A DNA stretch of 63,846 bases, filler included, from Platydemus manokwari (Eukaryota), in assembly GCA_037951405.1 (NCBI GenBank). It is 6 parts of 6 records of this genome, joined end to end, with 100 filler letters (N's around TTAATTAATTAA, not from the genome) between each part and the next. Parts side by side here need not be neighbours in the genome. Positions count along the whole stretch, not along the records: positions 14,276 to 24,785 come from JBBMOY011128108.1; 5 more parts are not named here. One strand, written 5' to 3'. The notes beneath the pieces are model-generated. The model made no database searches. It saw nothing but the letters and a program-made list of their open reading frames with translations, and was not told the DNA's origin. Positions 14,276-24,785 of this stretch are shown here, piece by piece; position 1 is the first letter of the stretch; each line of letters begins with the position of its first letter. Made by a program: the position numbers and the translations under genes.

Positions 14276-15089
14276 TAATTTGTAATTATTGATGATATTA
14301 CATAATAAATATATAATTAATTTTGCGCCCATATAACCGATAAGATCCGAAATTTACAAGAGTGATGGAAATCCTAGGTACAAAGTACCGAATCTCAGCA
14401 TCTATATATGCTGATGAATTTCCATCACTATTCACTCTAAAAAACTCGATACAGCGATATCATAGTTACGACAGAGATATTGAAATAAAAGAATTGAATT
14501 GAACGGTAAAGAAACAATAATATTGCAGTTATTTTATTAAAAGAAATTTAAATAAATTATAATTAAACTCTAAAGGATCTGCTTTTAGAGTCAATATATA
14601 TAATCTATAGTAAAATTTTAAGATGCAAGTTTTTTTGGTTCTCACGGTCTCTGTGAGACAACCTTACCGATTTGTTTATATAAATTTTTAGTGTGAGTTA
14701 AAATCTTTGAGTTAAATTTTTTTGTCTTTGTAAATTTGTTTTCTGCGATAAATAAGGTTTTTTTAACAAGTTTGACTGTTATTTATTTACGATTTTTCAA
14801 TTTAAATATAGCAAGGGAACTCAAGTTGTTAAGTTGACAAAACAACTTTTAACATCACATACAACCCAACAGAATTATTAAATATTTATTATTACAAATT
14901 TAAAATATTTTCTCAATTATTGCCCTTCCTAATTAGGAATGTGTACATGGATTATTTAAAAGTTACTTCATAATTAATCTTAAATAACTTATTAAAATTT
15001 AAATTCGTAAGAATTAAATTATATTTAATTTGTTGATTACAATGTTGCTCACAAAAATAAAAAATTAAAACATTACACCAACAACCCAT

Positions 15090-15602
15090 TTATACACTCA
15101 TGTTTTGAATTCTTCTCTTTCGAAGTTCGATTAAGTCCTTGATAACAAAAGTGAAATATACAACTAAATTGCCCATTATCACAAATTGGAAAGCTGTTGG
15201 CATTATCATCGAATACACGCGACCAAACGAATACTTAATGTTTATTAATGGGACAATATCCATTATAAGTAAGGCAGCAATAACCACACTGCCGATGAAA
15301 GAAAGAATTATAAATACAAATGTTGGAATTACAAATCGCATCTCTCGTTTAAATGAGCAGCATATTGCCAATATTCCTGCTAAACCCAATGCGGCCGTTC
15401 CAAATATCAACATTAAGTTGGAGAAAGCGTTTGCGAAACCAAAGTTCATAATATTTAAAACATAATGGAAACAAAAAACAATAAAGATTACTCCTGAATA
15501 TAGATATTTTTCTATAATATTTCTCGATATTTCATATTGTGATTCGATTGGTTTTTCGGATACGTACTCCAAATTGATATCACCAGGATTGCGAAAGGAC
15601 AT
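15090..15602 (-). CDS. Small four-transmembrane protein (170 aa), family uncertain
   Basis: Intact ATG-to-stop ORF, long for this AT content. Four hydrophobic segments (YLYSGVIFIVFCFHYVL, LMLIFGTAALGLAGILAICC, FVIPTFVFIILSFIGSVVIAALLI, IMPTAFQFVIMGNLVVYFTFVI) and a basic cytosolic tail. Confidence 0.75.
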   Translation of the reverse strand: MSFRNPGDINLEYVSEKPIESQYEISRNIIEKYLYSGVIFIVFCFHYVLNIMNFGFANAFSNLMLIFGTAALGLAGILAICCSFKREMRFVIPTFVFIILSFIGSVVIAALLIMDIVPLINIKYSFGRVYSMIMPTAFQFVIMGNLVVYFTFVIKDLIELRKRRIQNMSV

Positions 15603-17296
15603 TTTTACTAGATATGGACACTGCTAATAAGGTATCGGAATTTTTTGTCTCAAATAAGACTTTCAATGTCTCGTTGAATGATTTTCAATCGACCAATGTT
15701 CAATAACCATTATTAATATCGATAAGAACACAAGTGACTTGATTAAAATGCACATAAAATTTTAAATTCTTTGCTTAATGTTTACTTAAAATGATCTGAT
15801 TTTGTAGTGCTTGGATAGGAAAATCAAATTTTATTTTTACTAAATCTATGTATAGTATGTCTGGAATTTTTTGTAAAATGTTATGGTATTTTTGTGTTAT
15901 CTTATTTATTTATTAAGGCATTATCTAATTTATGATTCAACATCAAATTCCATCCGTTTATCAAAGGTAAGCCGAAGTCTCATAGTTGCTCGACTTTGAG
16001 TCAAACACATATTAATAATAAGGATCCTACAAAAAATCAAGTTACAAATTTCAAAATATGATTTTTCGGAGAAATTGAATAAAAGGGAATGTTATAATTT
16101 TCATCAAATTATCTTACGAAATAAATATTTAAGGAAATGGAAAATAAATATTTTGTTTTGCTTCTATTTATGATTTATCCAGAAAGGCTAGCATTTTAGG
16201 ATTTATTGAAGATAAGTAAAATCCCCTACATCATGTTAAGTTAGGAAGAAATATAAGATTTGGAAAAGTTTTTTATCAAAAATTATATTGAATGACGAAG
16301 GAATAATATTTTTCGATAAAGCTTCTAAATTTTTAATAAATCGTGAGTCATCAATATTTAATGTTAATTCGTTTCAGGTATTTAATTTATTTAATATAAT
16401 TTTGTAATTTTTTATTTTATCTATCATTTTGTTGAGTGAGATGATATTCTGCAAAAAGAAAAACGAAATCGCGCCTTGGAACCCTAGTTTTTGCACTTCA
16501 AACATTTACATGCCTATACAGCCATACAGGCATAGCAATCAGCCAATCATCGAAAAGTTAGATGAAAAACGACATTGGACAAATGGCAAAGCTACACAAC
16601 AACACACATATAGGGATTGACCAATCCCACTCAGGTAAAAACTTAAAACCCAATAAAAAGCAAATATCAAATCAAAATATGATGAAACATGACACAAAAA
16701 ATTGGGCACAGATCACGAATATAAAAATCTATATAAAGGCGGCCAACTTCCAGTTGAAAATCGAGTTTTGGTTGATATTTTGTGAAGTAGGTGTTTAACC
16801 GTGTTAAAAAATGATAATAATAATAAAATAGATATTAAAAATCTCATTTATTAATTTTCAACTATGTTATAAAATGCATTTATTTATATTTCTTAATTAT
16901 AATAAACATTTTTTAAAAATTAGAATAAATTATAAAAAAATTATTTAATTTTATAATTAATTTAATTTAGTAAAATATATAAATATAAATTTTTTAAAAT
17001 AACTTTTAAGCTTTAATAATATGAAATTTTTATTAATTATTTTAAAATGTGTAATGAAACTTTTGAATTTATAAATTGTCTATGTATAAATATTAGTTAT
17101 TTTTAACAAAAAATATAATTTAAAAATTCAACATTTATAGCATATATCATTTGGATATAATTAAAATAATAAAATAAAGTAATTTAAAAATATTTTTTTA
17201 ATTTATTTAATTTTATAACATTTAAACAAAACAATAATAAAGAATATTTGCTAATATATTTGTTTAGATAATTAATTTATTTATTTCATATCATCA

Positions 17297-19834
17297 ATGC
17301 ATCTTAGTAATCATATGTCTTTAAATTCAGCTAGTGGAATTCTATCATTATTGAATGATAAATCTGTAGAGATTAAAGTAAGCCTTAGATTAATAAAAAA
17401 ATATTGTGTTTATAAATTATATTTATAGGGTTTAGCATTAAAGAAACTAGATGAACATGTTGATATGTTCTGGCCAGAAATATCTGAGGAAATTGGTCAA
17501 ATTGAAATTCTATATGAAGATTCAAACTTTGTCTATCATAAATTAGCTGCATTGTTAGCTTCAAAGCTATATTATCATTTGGGTGAATTTCGTGAATCTT
17601 TAAATTATGCTCTTTGTGCTGAAGAATTGTATGATGTTAATGTGTCAAGTGATTATGTTGAAACAATTAATAATAAATGCATTGAAGAATACATTACAAT
17701 GAAACAGAAACACAATTTGCAAAAACATATTGATGGAATTAATGAATTTAATAATTTTTCTCGATTGGAACAATTTGTTAACAGAATGTTTGAAACATGT
17801 TTTCACCATCAACAACATAAACAAGCTATTGGTATTGGAATAGAGAGTCATCGATTGGATATGTTTGAAAGAGCGATTGAAACTGCATTAGATAAAAAGG
17901 AAATGTTGCAATATGCTTTCAAAGTTGCAATGAATTTGGTGTACAATAAGTCATTTCGAAATGAAATTTTAGAAAGAATAGTACGACTCTACATGACTCT
18001 TGCTAGCCCTGATTATTTGAACATGTGTCAATGTTTAATCTTTTTAAACGACTATCACAAAATCGCAGAAATATTGGAAAAATTAATCATGGAATCTGAT
18101 GATTCATCGATTATTGGTTATCAAATAGCTTATAATCTGTATGAGAATGTAACTCAACAATATATGTTGAAAGTTCGAATGGCATTGAAGGAATTGAAAC
18201 ATTATTCACGATTGTTTGATGAAAATAAAATAATGGGAAAAGATCAATGTGGTAAAGAAACTGTATATGAAGATGTTATGCAATTGAATGAGGAAGATCA
18301 AGTAATGAAGAGAAGATTTAGACATTTGAATTCGATATTAACTGGAAAGAAAGTTGTTGAATTAAATTTGGAATTTTTGAAGAAAAATAATAATATCGAT
18401 TTGAAAATTATTGATAAAATTAAAGTTGATGCTAAACATTCAATATTGCACAATGCAACAATTATTGCCAATGGTTTAATGAATTGTGGAACAACATCAG
18501 ATCGGTTTCTAAGAGAGAATATGGAATGGGTTAGTCGAGCTGTGAACTGGGCTAAATTCACTGCAACATCAACAATGGGTGTCATTCACAAAGGTAATGA
18601 AAAAGAAGCTTTGAAATTACTTTCATCCTATTTGCCAAAACAAAATTCCATAGCTGGCAGTATGTACATTGAAGGTGGAGCACTATATGCATTAGGTTTG
18701 ATTCACGCCAATCATGGTGGAGATGAAATGATTGAATATTTGTTGAGAAATTTACGAGATGCAATTACTGAACCAGTTCGACATGGAGGATGTTTGGGTC
18801 TCGGATTAGCAGCAATGGGTACTGAACGACAGGATGTTTATGAACAGATGAAGTTGAATTTATATCAAGATGATGCAGTGACTGGAGAAGCCGCAGGTAT
18901 TGGAATGGGATTAGTGATGTTGGGAAGTGGATGTGGTGAAGTTGTTAATGACATGTTGAGCTATGCTAAAGATACAGTTCATGAAAAAATCATTCGCGGA
19001 TTAGCTTTGGGTATGGCATTGACTATGTGCGGTAAACAGACAGATGCAGATACTTTGATTGCACAATTAATTACTGAGAAGGTCGCTATTTTACGATGGG
19101 CAGGAATGGCTACAATTGGAATGGCTTATTGTGGAACTGGTGATAATGATGCAATTAATAAACTACTTCATACTGCTGTTAGTGACACGAATGACGATGT
19201 GAAAAGATGGGCTGTTACGGCTTTAGGATTTGTTTTATTTAAAAATCCTCAACAAATTCCATCTCTTCTTTCTCCACTGAGTCATTCATACAATCCACAC
19301 ATTCGATATGGTGTTGCAATGGCTATTGGTGTTGGTTGTGCTGGTACAGGATTAAAAGCAGCTTTTGAAGTTGTTGAATCTCTTCTTGAAGATTCTGTTG
19401 ATTTTGTGAGACAAGGTGCTTTGATTGCAATGTCAATGTTATTGATGCAGCAAACCAAAGTTACTTGTTCGAAATCAGTGGATTTTCGAGAAAAGATATT
19501 TAAAATAATTTCTGATCGTCATGAAGACCTGATGACGAAATTCGGAGCTATTTTAGCAATGGGTATCATGGATGCTGGAGGACGAAATGTAACAATTTCT
19601 CTTCAAACCAGAATGGGAAATACTAATATGACTGCTGCAGTCGGTCTTTTGGTTTTCCAAAATTACTGGTTTTGGTACCCATTGACAAATTTCATTAGCT
19701 TAGCTTTTACTACAAATTCTGTCATTGATTTAAGGAAAGAGTTGCAAATGATGGATGAAGTAGTTCATGATGATGATGATGTGAAAGAACCACAAGCGCC
19801 TGAATCATTTTTATTTGAAGATGGTGAAAATTAA
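17297..19834 (+). CDS. PSMD1: 26S proteasome non-ATPase regulatory subunit 1 (Rpn2); exons 17297-17377 and 17429-19834, ~828 aa (alternative ATG at 17315)
   Basis: Exon 1 MSLNSASGILSLLNDKSVEIK joins in frame across a 51-bp GTAAGC..TAG intron (17378-17428) to GLALKKLDEHVDMFWPEISE. Diagnostic Rpn2 segments: NWAKFTAT, GGALYALGLIHANHG, HGGCLGLGLAAMGT, SYNPHIRYG, DAGGRNVTISL, WFWYPL. AATAAA at 19882-19887. Confidence 0.97.
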
Positions 19835-20576
19835 TCGCAGAAGGATTAGCCATGATAAATGATGTGAAATGATATTTTTTCAATAAATTGATTGTTTGTT
19901 GTTTATTGTTTTAAGTTATATTAAAATGTAAGAAAATATTTATTTTTCATTATTGTTTAATAATTTTATTACTTTGATTTTGTTTGAAAATGATTTATTT
20001 TTTACACAAATTTTATTTGTCGTGAATTACTGAGGAATATAATTTTCATTATTATTTAATGACATCACATTGTGATCTTGTTTAATAAGTTTATAATAAT
20101 AATATTGAGTTATATAATAATAATGTGTTTTACGGCTTGTGATATTTTATTTTATTCTTAACAGTTTCTAATTTTAACTCTTTGAATATCACTGTTGTCT
20201 TGATCAGTATCTACGAGTCCTTATCAAACCTAAGATACAATCTATAAAACCTTATAATTTCTTTCTTCGTCTCATGACTAATATTTTATGAAGATAGGAT
20301 GATCAGCAACAATGATATTGATGTTTTTAATGCTATCCGTCTCAAATTGTACACTTTCCTATTGCCTATATGATCTATCCCACAAATTCCAAACCAATAA
20401 CGCTTTTTAATACACTAATATTTATTATTAAGACACCCATACAACAATTAAATATAAAAATCACAATTGATTTTCATACTACACTATACGATTAAATACA
20501 TTGGAACGACTTTCCTACAAATTCTGGATAAAGAACGGTAGTTTATGAATGTATATGAACGGTAGAATATGAATGC

Positions 20577-21165
20577 GATAAATTAAAAATAAAGATAAAT
20601 CAATATTGGATATAAAATTTCTTCCAATTGATAAGTTCAGAAGTAATTATATTAACTAACGAAGAGATTTTGAAAACTAAAGATAACAAAAAATGTTTTA
20701 AACAAAATATTTTAAAAATTATGTCAAACAAAATCTTAATTTTATTTCAAAATTCTCAACAAATTCCATCTCTTGTTTCTCCACTGAGTCAATAATTTAA
20801 TCAACACATTCGATATGGTGCTGTAATGATTGTCGGTGAATTTGTAAGAAACTTCATGAGTCTGTCTTTACTGATACTATTGTCATTGTATTGAATCACG
20901 AATAATAAATTCCAGAATTAAAAATAAAATTTATAAGTCATTAATTTGTATTTAGATATTCAGAACTAATTGATATAAAAAAGGAAAAGAAAGAAAATGT
21001 CAAAATGGGATAAATTAAAAATAAAGATAAAACAATATTGGATAGAAAAATTCTTCAAATTGAGAAGTTCAGAAGAAATTATATCAATTAAAGAATAGAA
21101 TTTGAAAACAAAAGATAACAAAACATGTTTTAAATAAAACATTTTAAAAACTATGTTTAACAAAA
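20577..21165 (+). repeat. Diverged ~160-bp direct repeat pair (20577-20733 and 21009-21165)
   Basis: Both copies begin gataaattaaaaataaagataaa-caatattggata and remain alignable to aacaaaa. Offset 432 bp. Confidence 0.9.
20741..20888 (+). pseudogene. Degraded duplicated fragments of the PSMD1 coding sequence
   Basis: 20741-20837 (ctcaacaaattccatctcttgtttctccactgagtca...cacattcgatatggtg) matches ~19233-19330. ~20849-20888 weakly matches ~19688-19727. Confidence 0.85.
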
Positions 21166-21992
21166 AATTCTGGACAAATGTTCCAGTTGTCAATGCTCCA
21201 GAGAAGAGTAGAACCGATTATTCAAGATGGTTGGGATTAACCAGATAAGTTGGGAGAATTTGTGTTTTTGGATATAAATGAACAATGATTTTACATGTAC
21301 TGTATCTTGCTCGTTCTTTGGATCTTATCAATCAGATCGAAAATCAATATTGATGTTCATTTTAGTTGCCAGCCAAATTCCATTTCATTTTAAATAGGGA
21401 TAATTTATTTTATAAGGGTACTTTGAATATTCACGTATTTAAAATAGGGGTAATTTTAGTTGTTAGGTTGAAAATATAGATTAATTTCAGGGTTTAATTA
21501 TAAATTTTTAAATTATAGGTTTTTTATTTATAACTCACTTTTCAAAATTATTTCTATTTAATTTTATTTTATTATGTTAATTGTTAAGAATTCTGTCCAG
21601 AAAATTAAATGAAATAGAAAAACATTATTAATGATAAAAAAATACTACTAATTTACACAAATATTTACATAATAACTATAAAAATTCATCCACAGAAATG
21701 AAAATGGATTCGGAATCATATCTTCTTAATAAGCAATGTCATTATTCCATAAACCCAACATATCTCTAAATTCTTTCTTTTGTCTCTTATTTCTTCTTAT
21801 TCTTAATACCAAGTTTTATTGATTTTGCATTCTTTATTCTTAACTAATTTTATGATTTTCTATTCTTCATTACTTAGATTACACATAAATTTTTATGAGA
21901 TTAAATTGGCCAAATTTTTAAAGGAAATAAAAGAAATGACAGATCTCATGCAGGTCTTATTTCTTTGGGTTTTATGTGTGTATTTTTATTCT

Positions 21993-22153
21993 NNNNNNNN
22001 NNNNNNNNNNNNNNNNNNNNNNNNNNNNNNNNNNNNNNNNNNNNNNNNNNNNNNNNNNNNNNNNNNNNNNNNNNNNNNNNNNNNNNNNNNNNNNNNNNNN
22101 NNNNNNNNNNNNNNNNNNNNNNNNNNNNNNNNNNNNNNNNNNNNNNNNNNNNN
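21993..22153. other. Intra-scaffold assembly gap (161 N, no linker)
   Basis: Plain N run. Confidence 0.98.
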
Positions 22154-23149
22154 TCATTATTATAAGTAGTAAAAAATATTTATCCAGTGTTTATTTCTAA
22201 TTAAAATTTCAGATTATAACAATATAACCTTTGATGATGAATCATCAAAAGGATAATCAATACAGAATAACAAAACCAGACATGAAATATATTTTAATAG
22301 CTTGTGAATATTCATAAATAGATTTACCTTTTGTGAATAAATATAATAATTTTTATATTGAATAAAAATTAAAATTAAGTAAAGATTTTAGTGTGTTCAA
22401 GATTTATTGACATAATGATTTTCGTTTGACATCAGCAATAGAGATCATTTTGTATCACTTACAAATTTATAGTAGTGCTTGAAATTTTTATCTCACCATT
22501 TGAAAGTATATTTCTATTCTATAGAGGTTTGCCAATTACTTCATAACTATTATAAGGAAATCTCAACAGAGCCAATACGATTAACAGATAATCGATGTAA
22601 TTTGTTTTTATATTTAAAGAAGGCACAATAAAACAATCCGACATAATGAAAAAGTAGAAGAATGAAAAGAAAAACCTTGCTAAAATATATATTTGGAAAT
22701 AATCTTAACGCCCACATATTTTAATGACCCAACAGAAAACATTTTGAGACTAAAATCAATTTCTAACAGCTTACATTATCCAACTGACGCAGTACAGCAG
22801 ATGTTTATTATCATTTACAACAAATAAATTCAATAGAAATATTGAAGGCTTGTTGGATAGGTTTTATGGATATTTTGGGAATAATTTGGATAGTTTTTGA
22901 ATGCCTTGACCGCTTTGGAGGAGTTTAGCAGGGTTGATGAAGGTAATGACGATTGAAAATTGGGCAGAAGATTTAAAATAAAAAAGTGGCCAGTTCAGAC
23001 ATATCACAACTAAATAGCGAAGACTCAGAAATCCTCAGAAATTACAGCGTTTATCAATTGAAAACGAATCACGTTTTGAAGAATTATTTATAATCGGTAC
23101 ATTGAAATTATAATGATCATTGTAACGTGTAAGCGACATAGAATCAATC

Positions 23150-23390
23150 AATTTTATAGAAAACACTTGAAATAAAGAAAGAAAATTGAGATGTTGATTG
23201 AAGAAATCGTTCGATACTTGGAATACAAGTATATCTGACTCTAGAACGCATGGGTCGAACATCTCCCATAGGGAAAGGGAATATCAATAACTCAGGTTCA
23301 AACATAATCATCATATCGGGATGAGAATGATTTTTGAGGACAAGAAATTTTACAAAAATGTCAGGGTTGGCACTACGTAAGGTAGAGAGG
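23150..23390 (+). mobile_element. Heavily decayed LINE reverse transcriptase fragment
   Basis: VD/LKKSFDT (one base missing; DxxKAFD motif) followed at plausible spacing by NVRVGTT*G (GxPQG-like). Confidence 0.45.
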
Positions 23391-24785
23391 CCTGTTGTGA
23401 ATATGAGAATGATAAGCCTTCATATATTGATTTATTAAATAATAAAATATTTTGAAACTTGTAACCCAATGCAATACAAGCTACAGATTGTAATGAAATT
23501 TGCATTTTTTGTAAAACGAAATCGATACACAATATTTTACATTTTTCGTTGAAAATTGTGTATTTTTGTAAATTTATTGGAATCATTAGTTGCGATATGT
23601 ATTTACTGTAAATCTAAATCGTGAAATTATAACGATTGAAATATTTTGCTGAATATAACTTGGTTAATCCAATGTTATTTCAGAATTAATAAAATCAAGA
23701 AAATTATTGATTGAATGACTCAATCATTACGTGATTCCATCTAATATAATTTATTTTCTATCGATAAATTAGACGATTTGTAAAAGCACAGAAAATTAAA
23801 CGGTATATTTTGTAATAAATAAATAAGTATTGATTACACTCAGTGCATGCATTTTGTGATCGATCTAGATAAATAAATAAATATGGAAATGATGAGCCAC
23901 TCATTTCTGCTATCTTCTAACGAATTTGAAAATCTATCGATCACTATTTTGGGAATTTTTGATGAAGAAAGAAATAATGAATTTTATGAAATTATAATTG
24001 GCCAATTCTGTTGAACTCTATTTATTCATATATTCCCATTATGCAAAATTATCAATTCGAATAATATTACAAGAGATGACCTTCGGTTCCATGTTATCAT
24101 CAATAGAGCCTCATTTAATATATATTTCCATTTGTTGTGCACATGCATGTTTACAAAAATGATTTGTATGTTTTAAATTGTTAATCATTAAATTCTTTCG
24201 ATCTTCACATTGTTTCCCCTGCATCTTCTATACAACTTTGTCATATCTTTATTGGATCGTTTTTATATTTTTTCACATTTTCTTCTTTTTATTTTACGTT
24301 CCTGAGAATCAAAAAGAGAGGGCTCCGTGTGACTCGTTACCTTTTAATAATGAATGCCATGGCAACGTAATACAAAGTCACTAAACCAAATTATATTTTC
24401 ATTACAATTATTTAAACAACTAATTACTTGAAAAATATTGATTAAAATTTTTTCAAATATCAATATTTTATAAATCGTTACATGCGTTCACACAAATCTA
24501 AAGTATTTTTGTTTATGAGTTGGCAGAATAAATAATTTTTGATGATATATTATGAAGTGACACAGAGTTATTGATTTAATCACATTTCTGTCGACATTTT
24601 GACAATTCTTGAATACATTTATGCCATTGATATATAGGTGTAATAACTCTACGTGGGTAACATTTTTTGTAAGCGTTCATACATTCTTTCTCGCAAGGGT
24701 TACCGGAAACTGAGCAACAGAGTACAAACATTGTAACGATAATCAGCAAATGGACAAAACCTTTCTATATAAAGATAATGCAGAT

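What the first reader, a model, noticed from the sequence alone, without database searches (positions are those of the whole stretch)
19680..19834. Rpn2/PSMD1 with a clean in-frame loss of its C-terminal domain but a retained Rpn13-binding tail
Seen: after ...ISLAFTTNSVIDLRKELQM the frame runs straight into MDEVVHDDDDVKEPQAPESFLFEDGEN*, with no intron and a poly(A) signal ~50 bp later. Known: canonical Rpn2 (human, 953 aa) has well over 100 residues between the equivalent GLNKDLKM and the terminal EPEPPEPFEY motif. These include TAVLS, the KEKE stretch, NPARV and GGII of the C-terminal beta domain, and the terminal motif docks the ubiquitin receptor Rpn13/ADRM1. Here that block is missing, while the ~828-aa frame, PC repeats and tail are intact. 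Inference: a functional, structurally minimised Rpn2, possibly a specialised paralog defining a variant 19S particle.
Basis: partly seen in the sequence, partly recalled or inferred. Interest (0 to 1): 0.75.

Follow-up and report, generated by a model that had tools for sequence, protein, structure and literature searches.

The report
Flatworm Rpn2 lacking its C-terminal domain
This is an intact gene for the proteasome scaffold subunit Rpn2/PSMD1 from an AT-rich free-living flatworm that has cleanly lost its globular C-terminal domain but kept the short tail that normally docks the ubiquitin receptor Rpn13; it is a rare structural variant of a well-known protein, and neither its expression nor the presence of a full-length copy in the same genome could be checked.

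Summary
A two-exon gene (17297-17377 and 17429-19834) encodes an 828-aa Rpn2/PSMD1. It aligns to human PSMD1 residues 34-798. It then runs straight into a 27-residue acidic tail ending EPQAPESFLFEDGEN, with AATAAA 48 nt after the stop.

About 139 residues are missing, which is almost the whole Pfam RPN2_C domain. All five closest relatives, from one flatworm clade, have that domain.

- **Not a retrocopy:** a relative shares the same first intron.
- **No hidden exon:** the missing domain is not encoded elsewhere in the piece.
- **Constraint:** the frame has no stops against 40-102 in the other five frames, and dN/dS is at most about 0.08. The block just before the junction is 97% conserved. The junction block itself is only 37% conserved.
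- **History:** a decayed Rpn2 relic 900 bp downstream is closest to this gene (86-89% nt). It still carries the first ~28 codons of the lost domain, so the loss looks lineage-specific and fairly recent.
- **Second case:** an unrelated eukaryotic transcript-like contig (P0307) has the same domain-less, tail-retaining architecture.

I read it as a selectively maintained, minimised Rpn2 (confidence 0.6). Whether it is a paralog or the only copy cannot be decided from this piece, so the "variant 19S particle" idea is untested.

The parts
17297..17377 (+). Exon 1, 27 codons (MHLSNHMSLNSASGILSLLNDKSVEIK). The second in-frame ATG at 17315 matches the start of relative L001.
   Evidence: Sequence. tblastn of P0007 begins at 17315. 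L001 encodes MSLTSASGILSLLDDKAPEVR before the same intron.
17378..17428 (+). 51-nt intron, GTAAGC...ATAG.
   Evidence: The same intron position is present in the genomic contig L001 of a relative, which argues against a retrocopy.
17429..19834 (+). Exon 2, 801 codons plus the stop. It contains the rest of the Rpn2 coding sequence.
   Evidence: ORF. tblastn of P0001 residues 29-815 maps to 17429-19750 at 75% identity. phmmer to human PSMD1 gives E 2e-263.
17468..18391 (+). RPN2_N rod-like helical domain.
   Evidence: Pfam PF21505, E 3.3e-75, residues 2-309 of the ORF starting at 17465.
18440..19741 (+). PC-repeat toroid, including the two axial helices.
   Evidence: PC_rep E 7e-32 and HEAT_2 E 1.6e-14. 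In the AlphaFold model the helices run from 338 to 771. The toroid has pLDDT 85-95, and the axial helices are 734-745 and 751-759. Foldseek's top hits are Rpn2/PSMD1 chains.
19748..19753 (+). Deletion junction, between the codons M774 and M775 (exon-2 numbering). About 139 residues are absent here, corresponding to P0001 residues 816-954.
   Evidence: Alignments A1 and A3. RPN2_C spans residues 804-950 in P0001. Local identity is 37% in the junction block against 97% in the block before it.
19751..19831 (+). 27-residue acidic tail (MDEVVHDDDDVKEPQAPESFLFEDGEN), predicted to be disordered.
   Evidence: Model residues 762-801 have pLDDT below 50.
19787..19816 (+). Rpn13-docking-like motif EPQAPESFLF, equivalent to human PSMD1 941-950 (EPEPPEPFEY).
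   Evidence: tblastn of the P0002 tail maps to 19787-19822. The near-invariant columns E787, P788, P791, E792 and F794 are retained. The human contact residues are listed in PMC5494190.
19882..19887 (+). AATAAA polyadenylation signal, 48 nt after the stop codon.
20740..20838 (+). Rpn2 relic, part A. It is pseudogenic with one in-frame stop and corresponds to P0001 residues 643-675.
   Evidence: tblastn E 7e-9. Nucleotide identity to the gene at 19233-19321 is 86-89%, against 74-75% to relatives L002 and L004.
20847..20995 (+). Rpn2 relic, part B. It corresponds to P0001 residues ~794-843, which is the toroid end plus the first ~28 codons of the RPN2_C domain that the gene lacks. It has three stops and a frameshift.
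   Evidence: tblastn E 2e-5 to 9e-5. It keeps the canonical IVLN motif where the gene now has IDLR.
20572..20733 (+). Left copy of a 162-nt direct repeat that flanks the relic.
   Evidence: the repeat finder family D1, 88% identity, spacing 432 nt.
21004..21165 (+). Right copy of the 162-nt direct repeat that flanks the relic.
   Evidence: the repeat finder family D1.

Best explanation
This is a real, selectively maintained gene for a minimised Rpn2/PSMD1 in an AT-rich free-living flatworm of the clade sister to Neodermata, probably triclad-like.

Shown: the N-terminal rod and the closed PC-repeat toroid with its two axial helices are intact. These are the parts that build Rpn2 into the 19S base.

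Inferred: the protein can therefore still be incorporated into the 19S base.

Shown: an in-frame genomic deletion of about 417 nt removed almost exactly the globular RPN2_C domain, including the KEKE-rich loop. It joined the end of the toroid to the acidic stretch that precedes the C-terminal EPxxPExFx[FY] motif.

Inferred: Rpn13, and through it Uch37, would still be recruited. It would hang on a flexible tether of about 25-40 residues attached directly to the toroid, rather than beyond a globular domain.

Inferred from the neighbouring relic: the deletion happened within this lineage and fairly recently, after most of the lineage's sequence divergence had accumulated.

Whether the genome also holds a full-length Rpn2 is unknown. 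I lean slightly (about 55:45) towards this being a second, divergent copy rather than the only one.
For: - **Identity and intact core.** Pfam finds RPN2_N (E 3e-75) and PC_rep (E 7e-32). The protein aligns collinearly to human PSMD1 34-798. The model has toroid pLDDT 85-95 and a disordered tail, and Foldseek's top hits are all Rpn2 chains.
- **Real loss rather than a hidden exon.** tblastn with three full-length relatives finds no RPN2_C coding sequence in the piece except a decayed relic.
- **Not a retrocopy.** The same 5' intron is present in relative L001.
- **Open frame.** There are 0 stops in 828 codons, against 40-102 in the other five frames. With 420 possible stop-creating substitutions, P(no stop) is 4.5e-4 at 5.5% neutral divergence.
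- **Purifying selection.** dN is 0.17 with dS saturated above 2, so omega is at most about 0.08. 198 of 222 sites that are invariant in the other 21 taxa are kept, and most of the 24 changes are conservative.
- **Localised divergence.** Identity is 97% at residues 760-789 and 37% at 790-819. The changes that followed the deletion are therefore local, not gene-wide decay.
- **Tail.** The motif residues that are at least 90% conserved are all retained. In human they are the Rpn13 contacts (PMC5494190).
- **Relic.** It is 86-89% identical to this gene at the nucleotide level and still carries the start of RPN2_C.
- **Independent second case.** P0307 has the same architecture.
Against: - There is no expression, protein or binding data.
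- The exact protein and its species are absent from the collections.
- The time since the deletion is unknown, so a very recent loss of function would leave the frame intact.
- The lineage evolves about 4 times faster than its nearest relatives: 88 against 18 unique changes, and 24 changes at otherwise invariant sites, the most of any taxon compared. That is also what relaxed constraint looks like.
- Human contact P947 is Ser here, and P944 is Ala.
- RPN2_C is present in every other complete Rpn2 among the 120 closest hits (the one exception is a mis-modelled sturgeon gene). It is also present in all but one complete protein among the 150 best cluster representatives.
- The piece is a short scaffold with a gap, so it could be one haplotype.
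Confidence: 0.6

Rival explanations
1. It is a young, redundant duplicate (or the damaged copy of a pair) that lost its C-terminal domain and is on its way to becoming a pseudogene. The frame is still open only because too little time has passed. A canonical Rpn2 elsewhere in the genome does the work.
For: - The lineage shows faster evolution and 24 substitutions at sites that are invariant in the other 21 taxa.
- A decayed Rpn2 fragment lies next door, so copies of this gene have been made and lost at this locus.
- The domain is otherwise near-universal.
- At only 2% neutral divergence, P(no stop) is still 0.06.
Against: - Divergence is concentrated at the junction, while the adjacent 30 residues are 97% conserved. 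The rest of the protein runs at 57-90% identity in all but one 30-residue block, the poorly conserved linker at 280-309.
- The substitutions at invariant sites are mostly conservative.
- The start codon, splice sites, tail motif, stop and poly(A) signal are all intact.
- The relic shares several of the lineage's changes, so the acceleration largely predates the domain loss.
Confidence: 0.2
2. It is an assembly artefact or a haplotype-specific deletion. The real locus, or the other allele, contains the RPN2_C block, and the short scaffold shows a collapsed or allelic form.
For: - The piece is only about 10.5 kb and contains a 161-N gap.
- An (ATG)5 microsatellite sits at 19767-19781, just 3' of the junction. 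This is the kind of sequence where slippage or collapse can occur.
- No independent copy of the sequence could be found for comparison.
Against: - The deletion is exactly in frame and at a domain boundary.
- The 15 codons before the junction have diverged from both the relic and the relatives (N796R at an otherwise invariant site, IVLN->IDLR). A collapse would not produce that.
- There is no repeat shared by the two deletion ends in relatives, and no N near the junction.
Confidence: 0.08
3. It is the species' only Rpn2. The globular C-terminal domain has become dispensable in this flatworm, so there is no variant particle, just a streamlined standard one.
For: - Its gene structure is the same as in relatives.
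- Other members of the same clade also have long branches (P0121 0.58, P0122 0.37), so the long branch can be a species effect.
- The relic shows that the lineage's divergence preceded the domain loss.
- An unrelated eukaryote (P0307) also has a domain-less Rpn2 with the tail.
Against: - A domain kept from yeast to human is more easily lost from a redundant copy.
- This gene has the most substitutions at invariant sites of any taxon compared.
- This could not be tested here, because the rest of the genome is not available.
Confidence: 0.27

Closest known systems
Canonical Rpn2 / PSMD1 (human PSMD1, 953 aa; yeast Rpn2, 945 aa; flatworm relatives P0001-P0003, P0121, P0122)
   Same: It has the RPN2_N rod and the PC-repeat toroid with axial helices. 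It is about 53% identical to a fish PSMD1 and 52% to human PSMD1 chains in the Foldseek alignment, and 75% identical to P0001. The first intron is in the same position as in L001. It ends in the acidic EPxxPExFx[FY] C-terminal motif.
   Different: It lacks about 139 residues, which is nearly all of Pfam RPN2_C: the globular C-terminal domain plus the KEKE loop. It also lacks the ~31-residue acidic extension that its nearest flatworm relatives carry after FLFEED. It evolves about 4 times faster than those relatives.
P0307, an 814-aa Rpn2 on a transcript-like contig from an unidentified GC-rich eukaryote (Logan ERR11260148, locus L006)
   Same: A complete ORF with RPN2_N and the PC toroid, no RPN2_C, then about 45 residues ending in EPEPPEPFEWP. 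The architecture is the same: domain lost, tail kept.
   Different: It is only about 40-43% identical. Its deletion boundary lies about 10 residues earlier (after ...FQPTA), so the event was independent. It could be an exon-skipped isoform. The organism is unknown.
Rpn1 / PSMD2, the paralogous PC-repeat toroid subunit of the 19S base
   Same: It has a PC-repeat toroid of similar size and no RPN2_C domain.
   Different: The match is only distant: E about 1e-12 against 1e-263 for PSMD1. Foldseek identity is 17-18%. Rpn1 has no RPN2_N domain and no Rpn13-docking tail. The window gene is clearly Rpn2, not Rpn1.
Tissue-specific proteasome subunit paralogs, such as mammalian PSMA8/alpha4s and Drosophila testis-specific subunit duplicates (from my own knowledge, not checked here)
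   Different: Those are whole-length duplicates with altered sequence, not domain deletions. No evidence here shows that this gene is a paralog or is tissue-restricted.

Membership tests
Rpn2 / PSMD1 (26S proteasome non-ATPase regulatory subunit 1) | N-terminal rod-like helical domain (Pfam RPN2_N, PF21505) | tested here: met
   E 3.3e-75, with profile positions 32-296 of 296 matched. The model is helical throughout this region.
Rpn2 / PSMD1 (26S proteasome non-ATPase regulatory subunit 1) | PC-repeat domain forming a closed toroid around two axial helices (He et al. 2012, as cited in PMC10940360) | tested here: met
   PC_rep E 7e-32. There is a collinear alignment to human PSMD1 up to residue 798. 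The model has toroid pLDDT 85-95 and axial helices at 734-745 and 751-759. Foldseek gives E 1e-48 to Rpn2 chains. Toroid closure itself was not measured on coordinates.
Rpn2 / PSMD1 (26S proteasome non-ATPase regulatory subunit 1) | Globular C-terminal domain (Pfam RPN2_C, PF18004) | tested here: not met
   There is no hit even at E<=1 on the last 120 aa. The alignment shows about 139 residues absent. P0001 has the domain at residues 804-950.
Rpn2 / PSMD1 (26S proteasome non-ATPase regulatory subunit 1) | C-terminal Rpn13-docking peptide (human 940-953, QEPEPPEPFEYIDD; contacts P942, P944, P945, P947, F948, Y950) | tested here: inconclusive
   The tail is KEPQAPESFLFEDGEN. The equivalents of P942, P945 and F948 are kept, Y950 is Phe, P944 is Ala (as in the clade) and P947 is Ser (unique to this gene). 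Binding was not tested.
Rpn2 / PSMD1 (26S proteasome non-ATPase regulatory subunit 1) | Descent from the Rpn2 orthologous group rather than from Rpn1 or another PC-repeat protein | tested here: met
   The ML tree places it with three flatworm Rpn2 sequences (SH-aLRT 100), sister to neodermatan Rpn2. Rpn1 hits are about 250 orders of magnitude weaker.
Rpn2 / PSMD1 (26S proteasome non-ATPase regulatory subunit 1) | Stoichiometric incorporation into the 19S base | not testable with these tools
   This needs proteasome purification and mass spectrometry, or a structure.
Specialised proteasome-subunit paralog (variant 19S particle) | A second, canonical copy of the same subunit in the same genome | not testable with these tools
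   Only this 10.5-kb piece is available. The exact-sequence look-ups, the neighbour-gene search and the metagenome scans were all blank.
Processed (retro)pseudogene | Loss of the parental introns | tested here: not met
   The 51-nt intron is retained at the same position as in the genomic contig L001.

The most novel reading that the evidence does not exclude
The globular C-terminal domain of Rpn2 is dispensable, and the only indispensable C-terminal element is the short Rpn13-docking peptide. On this reading the flatworm runs a 19S particle, either its standard one or a paralog-defined variant, in which Rpn13/Uch37 is tethered directly to the toroid. The same minimisation arose independently in at least one other eukaryote (P0307).
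Probability: 0.35. Interest if true: 0.6.

Novelty: new variant of a known kind. Interest (0 to 1): 0.42.

Why it matters
Rpn2 is the largest scaffold of the proteasome's regulatory particle. Its three-domain layout is conserved from yeast to human, yet the role of the globular C-terminal domain and its KEKE loop is poorly defined compared with that of the terminal Rpn13-docking peptide.

A naturally occurring, selectively maintained Rpn2 without that domain would be a ready-made separation-of-function allele. A second independent example strengthens the case. Such an allele would say that the domain is not needed for base assembly or for Rpn13 recruitment. It would also allow tests of whether the geometry and length of the Rpn13 tether matter for substrate capture.

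If the gene proves to be a paralog with restricted expression, it would be a first case of a domain-deleted 19S scaffold variant in a regeneration model group. If it proves to be a decaying copy or an allele, it is ordinary.

Tried and rejected
- **Retrocopy rejected.** The 5' intron is shared with L001.
- **Hidden or alternative 3' exon rejected.** tblastn of P0001, P0002 and P0007 against the whole piece finds only the stop-ridden relic. The 161-N gap was left untouched.
- **Species identification and a same-species canonical copy.** All of these failed:
  - exact look-ups of the 789-aa ORF and of the neighbouring 170-aa ORF were blank;
  - the neighbouring ORF has no homologs and no Pfam hit;
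  - two metagenome scans gave nothing useful, only one 50%-identical contig, L003;
  - Rfam and the tRNA scan were blank.
- **Fragments with the same junction.** A search with the 189-aa C-terminal piece found none. It found only two more relatives that have the domain.
- **Branch-specific dN/dS.** Not obtainable, because dS is saturated and base composition differs strongly (GC3 23% against 67%).
- **Apparent domain-less hits that are artefacts:**
  - P0005 (sturgeon, 'UNVERIFIED_CONTAM') is a fish gene model with internal duplications;
  - P0299, P0316 and P0358 end in read-through junk;
  - P0251 and P0325 are cut inside RPN2_C.
- **Microhomology at the deletion ends.** It could not be established from diverged relatives.
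- **Bacterial promoter/terminator scan.** Irrelevant for a eukaryotic gene.
- **Spliced model.** No search was made with the joined exon 1 + exon 2 protein. All searches used exon 2 by reference. The joined coding sequence was used only inside a local script, to count codons and stop-creating substitutions.
Full report
**1. What is in the sequence**

The piece (14276-24785) is very AT-rich: GC is 10-26% between genes and 30-40% in coding sequence. Its longest ORF runs from 17465 to 19834 on the + strand (789 aa). Upstream there is a 27-codon first exon (17297-17377; a second in-frame ATG lies at 17315) and a 51-nt GT..AG intron (17378-17428). These join in frame to 17429, giving an 828-codon gene. 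AATAAA lies at 19882-19887, 48 nt after the stop.

Pfam finds RPN2_N (E 3e-75), PC_rep (E 7e-32) and HEAT_2, but no RPN2_C. phmmer against PDB aligns the protein collinearly to human PSMD1 residues 34-798 (E 2e-263). The alignment ends at DLKM. The frame then continues as MDEVVHDDDDVKEPQAPESFLFEDGEN and stops. The only amendment is that the gene does have one small intron, near its 5' end.

**2. What is missing**

The closest proteins in the 5.8-billion-sequence collection are:
- P0001, a UniParc-only entry of 1014 aa;
- P0002, from the genomic Logan contig L001;
- P0003, from the JGI contig L002.

They are 74-82% identical over the last 290 residues, and all carry RPN2_C. A fragment search added P0121 (L004) and P0122 (L005), which also have the domain.

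Alignments A1 and A3 show the window protein jumping from ...KELQM to the acidic stretch just before the EPxAPEPFLFE motif. It skips the equivalent of P0001 residues ~816-954, which contain TAVLS, the KEKE stretch, NPARV and GGIL. Pfam places RPN2_C at 804-950 in P0001. The last 120 residues of the window protein give no RPN2_C hit even at E<=1. The gene also lacks the ~31-residue acidic extension that P0001-P0003 carry after FLFEED.

**3. Artefacts and trivial explanations**

- **Retrocopy.** L001 is genomic and has an intron at exactly the same position, followed by one long exon. This is the ancestral gene structure, so the gene is not a retrocopy.
- **Hidden exon.** tblastn with three full-length relatives over the whole piece finds no RPN2_C coding sequence apart from a stop-ridden relic. 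The tail that follows the junction is itself the homologous C-terminus. No downstream exon could therefore restore the domain.
- **Misassembly.** This cannot be excluded without reads, but it is unlikely. The deletion is in frame and at a domain boundary. The 15 codons before it have diverged both from relatives and from the relic (see section 5). A collapse would not cause that.
- **Masked stretch.** The 161-N stretch (21993-22153) was left alone.

**4. Who it belongs to and how it evolves**

An ML tree (LG+C20, 24 taxa) places the window protein with P0001-P0003 (SH-aLRT 100). That clade is sister to the neodermatan flatworms, with Macrostomum outside. The source is therefore a free-living flatworm, probably triclad-like. 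The species itself could not be identified.

The terminal branch of the window protein is 0.37, against 0.03-0.08 for its three sisters. With Schistosoma as outgroup, it has 88 unique changes against 18 for P0001. It has 24 substitutions at 222 sites that are invariant in the other 21 taxa, the most of any taxon compared. Most of these are conservative, such as K>Q, V>L, E>D, I>V and R>K.

In a C-terminal-region tree, P0121 (0.58) and P0122 (0.37) are equally long-branched. Rate variation between species of this clade is therefore real. The long branch alone does not prove that the gene is a paralog.

**5. Evidence for constraint**

- The frame has no stop in 828 codons, while the other five frames have 40-102.
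- 420 single substitutions would create a stop. At 5.5% neutral divergence, the chance of none is 4.5e-4.
- dN to L002 is 0.17 with dS above 2 (saturated), so omega is at most about 0.08 over the whole history.
- Identity to P0001 runs at 57-90% in all but one 30-residue block before the toroid end. The exception is the poorly conserved linker at 280-309 (40%), where P0001 and P0002 are themselves only 60% identical. Identity reaches 97% for residues 760-789 (the axial helices). It drops to 37% in the block that contains the junction. This block includes N796R at an otherwise invariant Asn. Such a local burst next to a strongly conserved block is what one expects if the segment that used to lead into the lost domain was released from constraint while the rest of the protein stayed under selection.
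- The tail keeps every column that is at least 90% conserved in a 25-sequence alignment: E787, P788, P791, E792 and F794.
- In human PSMD1, residues 940-953 suffice for nanomolar binding of the Rpn13 Pru domain. P942, P944, P945, P947, F948 and Y950 make the contacts (PMC5494190). Here the equivalents are P, A, P, S, F and F. The Ala is shared with the clade, and the Ser is unique to this gene.

**6. A fossil next door**

About 900 bp downstream of the stop lies a pseudogenic Rpn2 fragment on the same strand.
- **Part A (20740-20838)** corresponds to P0001 residues 643-675 and has one stop. It is 86-89% identical in nucleotides to the gene's own 19233-19321, against 74-75% to L002 and L004. 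It shares the gene's derived QQ, SPLS and HIRYG states.
- **Part B (20847-20995)** corresponds to P0001 residues ~794-843, has three stops and a frameshift, and gives tblastn E 2e-5 to 9e-5. It keeps the canonical FT.T..IVLN.E motif. It then continues through P.L.IK...F.Y.E.I.I.KEKK, which is the first ~28 codons of the RPN2_C domain that the gene lacks.
- The fragment is flanked by a 162-nt direct repeat at 88% identity.

My inference, at moderate confidence because part B is more decayed than part A: a copy belonging to this gene's own lineage still had the domain after most of the lineage-specific substitutions had accumulated. The domain loss would then be late and lineage-specific, and it would not be the cause of the long branch.

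**7. Structure**

An AlphaFold2 model of exon 2 was built with a 25-sequence alignment (mean pLDDT 76). It gives a helical rod and a confident toroid (pLDDT 85-95), with axial helices at 734-745 and 751-759. Residues 762-801 are disordered (pLDDT below 50). Foldseek's best PDB matches are human, spinach and yeast Rpn2 chains (E down to 1e-48). Rpn1 chains are far behind. He et al. [quoted passage not shown] This protein has the first two.

**8. How unusual it is**

- Among the 120 best word-search hits, every complete Rpn2 has RPN2_C. The single exception, P0005, is a mis-modelled sturgeon gene.
- The exhaustive search of 1.84 billion cluster representatives found 4647 hits. I inspected the best 150.
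- Proteins that end soon after the toroid were checked one by one. P0299, P0316 and P0358 end in read-through junk. P0251 and P0325 are cut within RPN2_C.
- One is a true parallel. P0307 (814 aa) is a complete ORF on a 2.6-kb transcript-like contig from ERR11260148, with GC 59% and about 40% identity to animal Rpn2. It has RPN2_N and the toroid but no RPN2_C. About 45 residues follow the toroid, ending in EPEPPEPFEWP. Its boundary lies about 10 residues earlier than here, so the event was independent.

The architecture is therefore rare, but it is not unique.

**9. Interpretation**

The best-supported reading is a selectively maintained, minimised Rpn2 (confidence 0.6). The rod and toroid are intact, so it can presumably be built into the 19S base. 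The Rpn13-docking peptide now hangs on a short flexible acidic tether attached directly to the toroid.

Shown here:
- the anatomy;
- the absence of the domain;
- the historical constraint on the sequence;
- the retention of the tail motif.

Inferred, not shown:
- incorporation into the 19S base;
- Rpn13 binding;
- continued function after the deletion.

The rivals are:
- a young decaying duplicate (0.2);
- an assembly or allelic artefact (0.08);
- within the functional reading, the sole-copy alternative to a paralog (roughly 45:55).

Only the rest of the genome, transcriptome and proteome can test it.

**10. Procedural notes**

All database searches used exon 2 by reference. The joined two-exon protein was never submitted to a search. 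It was concatenated only in a local script, for codon counts. No sequence here was taken for human. The N stretch was not filled or looked up, and look-ups of the gene used flanks short enough not to reach it.

Noticed in passing
window 20572-21165: A 432-nt unit made of a 162-nt direct repeat (20572-20733 and 21004-21165, 88% identical) that brackets the decayed Rpn2 fragment. It could be a local tandem duplication, or a mobile or repeat element that captured gene pieces. The fragment itself jumps from Rpn2 residue ~675 to ~794.
   Followed up: partly
window 15090-15602 (-): A 170-codon ORF in 26-31% GC sequence. By eye it encodes a protein with about four hydrophobic helices. It has no Pfam hit and no homolog in the 5.8-billion-protein collection. 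It may be a lineage-specific membrane protein.
   Followed up: partly
L004 (JGI 3300016484, Ga0186813_135368) 109-1029: Another AT-rich member of the same flatworm Rpn2 clade (P0121). It has RPN2_C, but its ORF stops after GGIIVVRNSQHNKR, about 45 residues before the canonical end. No EPxAPEPF tail is present in the remaining 262 nt. This is the reciprocal pattern to the window gene, or an artefact.
   Followed up: no
L006 (Logan ERR11260148) 20-2464: P0307 is a complete 814-aa Rpn2 from an unidentified GC-rich eukaryote. It has no RPN2_C but a perfect EPEPPEPFEW tail. It is an independent instance of the same minimised architecture.
   Followed up: partly
P0001 residues 1-28: The N-terminus of the nearest relative (UniParc UPI0006027AF4) reads like translated intron up to ...GP|GFALKKL. 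It is probably a gene model that missed the small first exon and started inside the conserved intron.
   Followed up: no
window 19767-19781: A perfect (ATG)5 microsatellite encoding the DDDD run lies 14 nt downstream of the deletion junction. It is a conceivable substrate for slippage or microhomology, but this could not be tested with the diverged relatives available.
   Followed up: no
window 16776-17275: The 500 bp upstream of the gene are only 10.6% GC. That is extreme even for this AT-rich piece. No promoter model for this organism was available to interpret it.
   Followed up: no
window 21993-22153: A 161-base run of N (an assembly gap or masked stretch).
   Followed up: no
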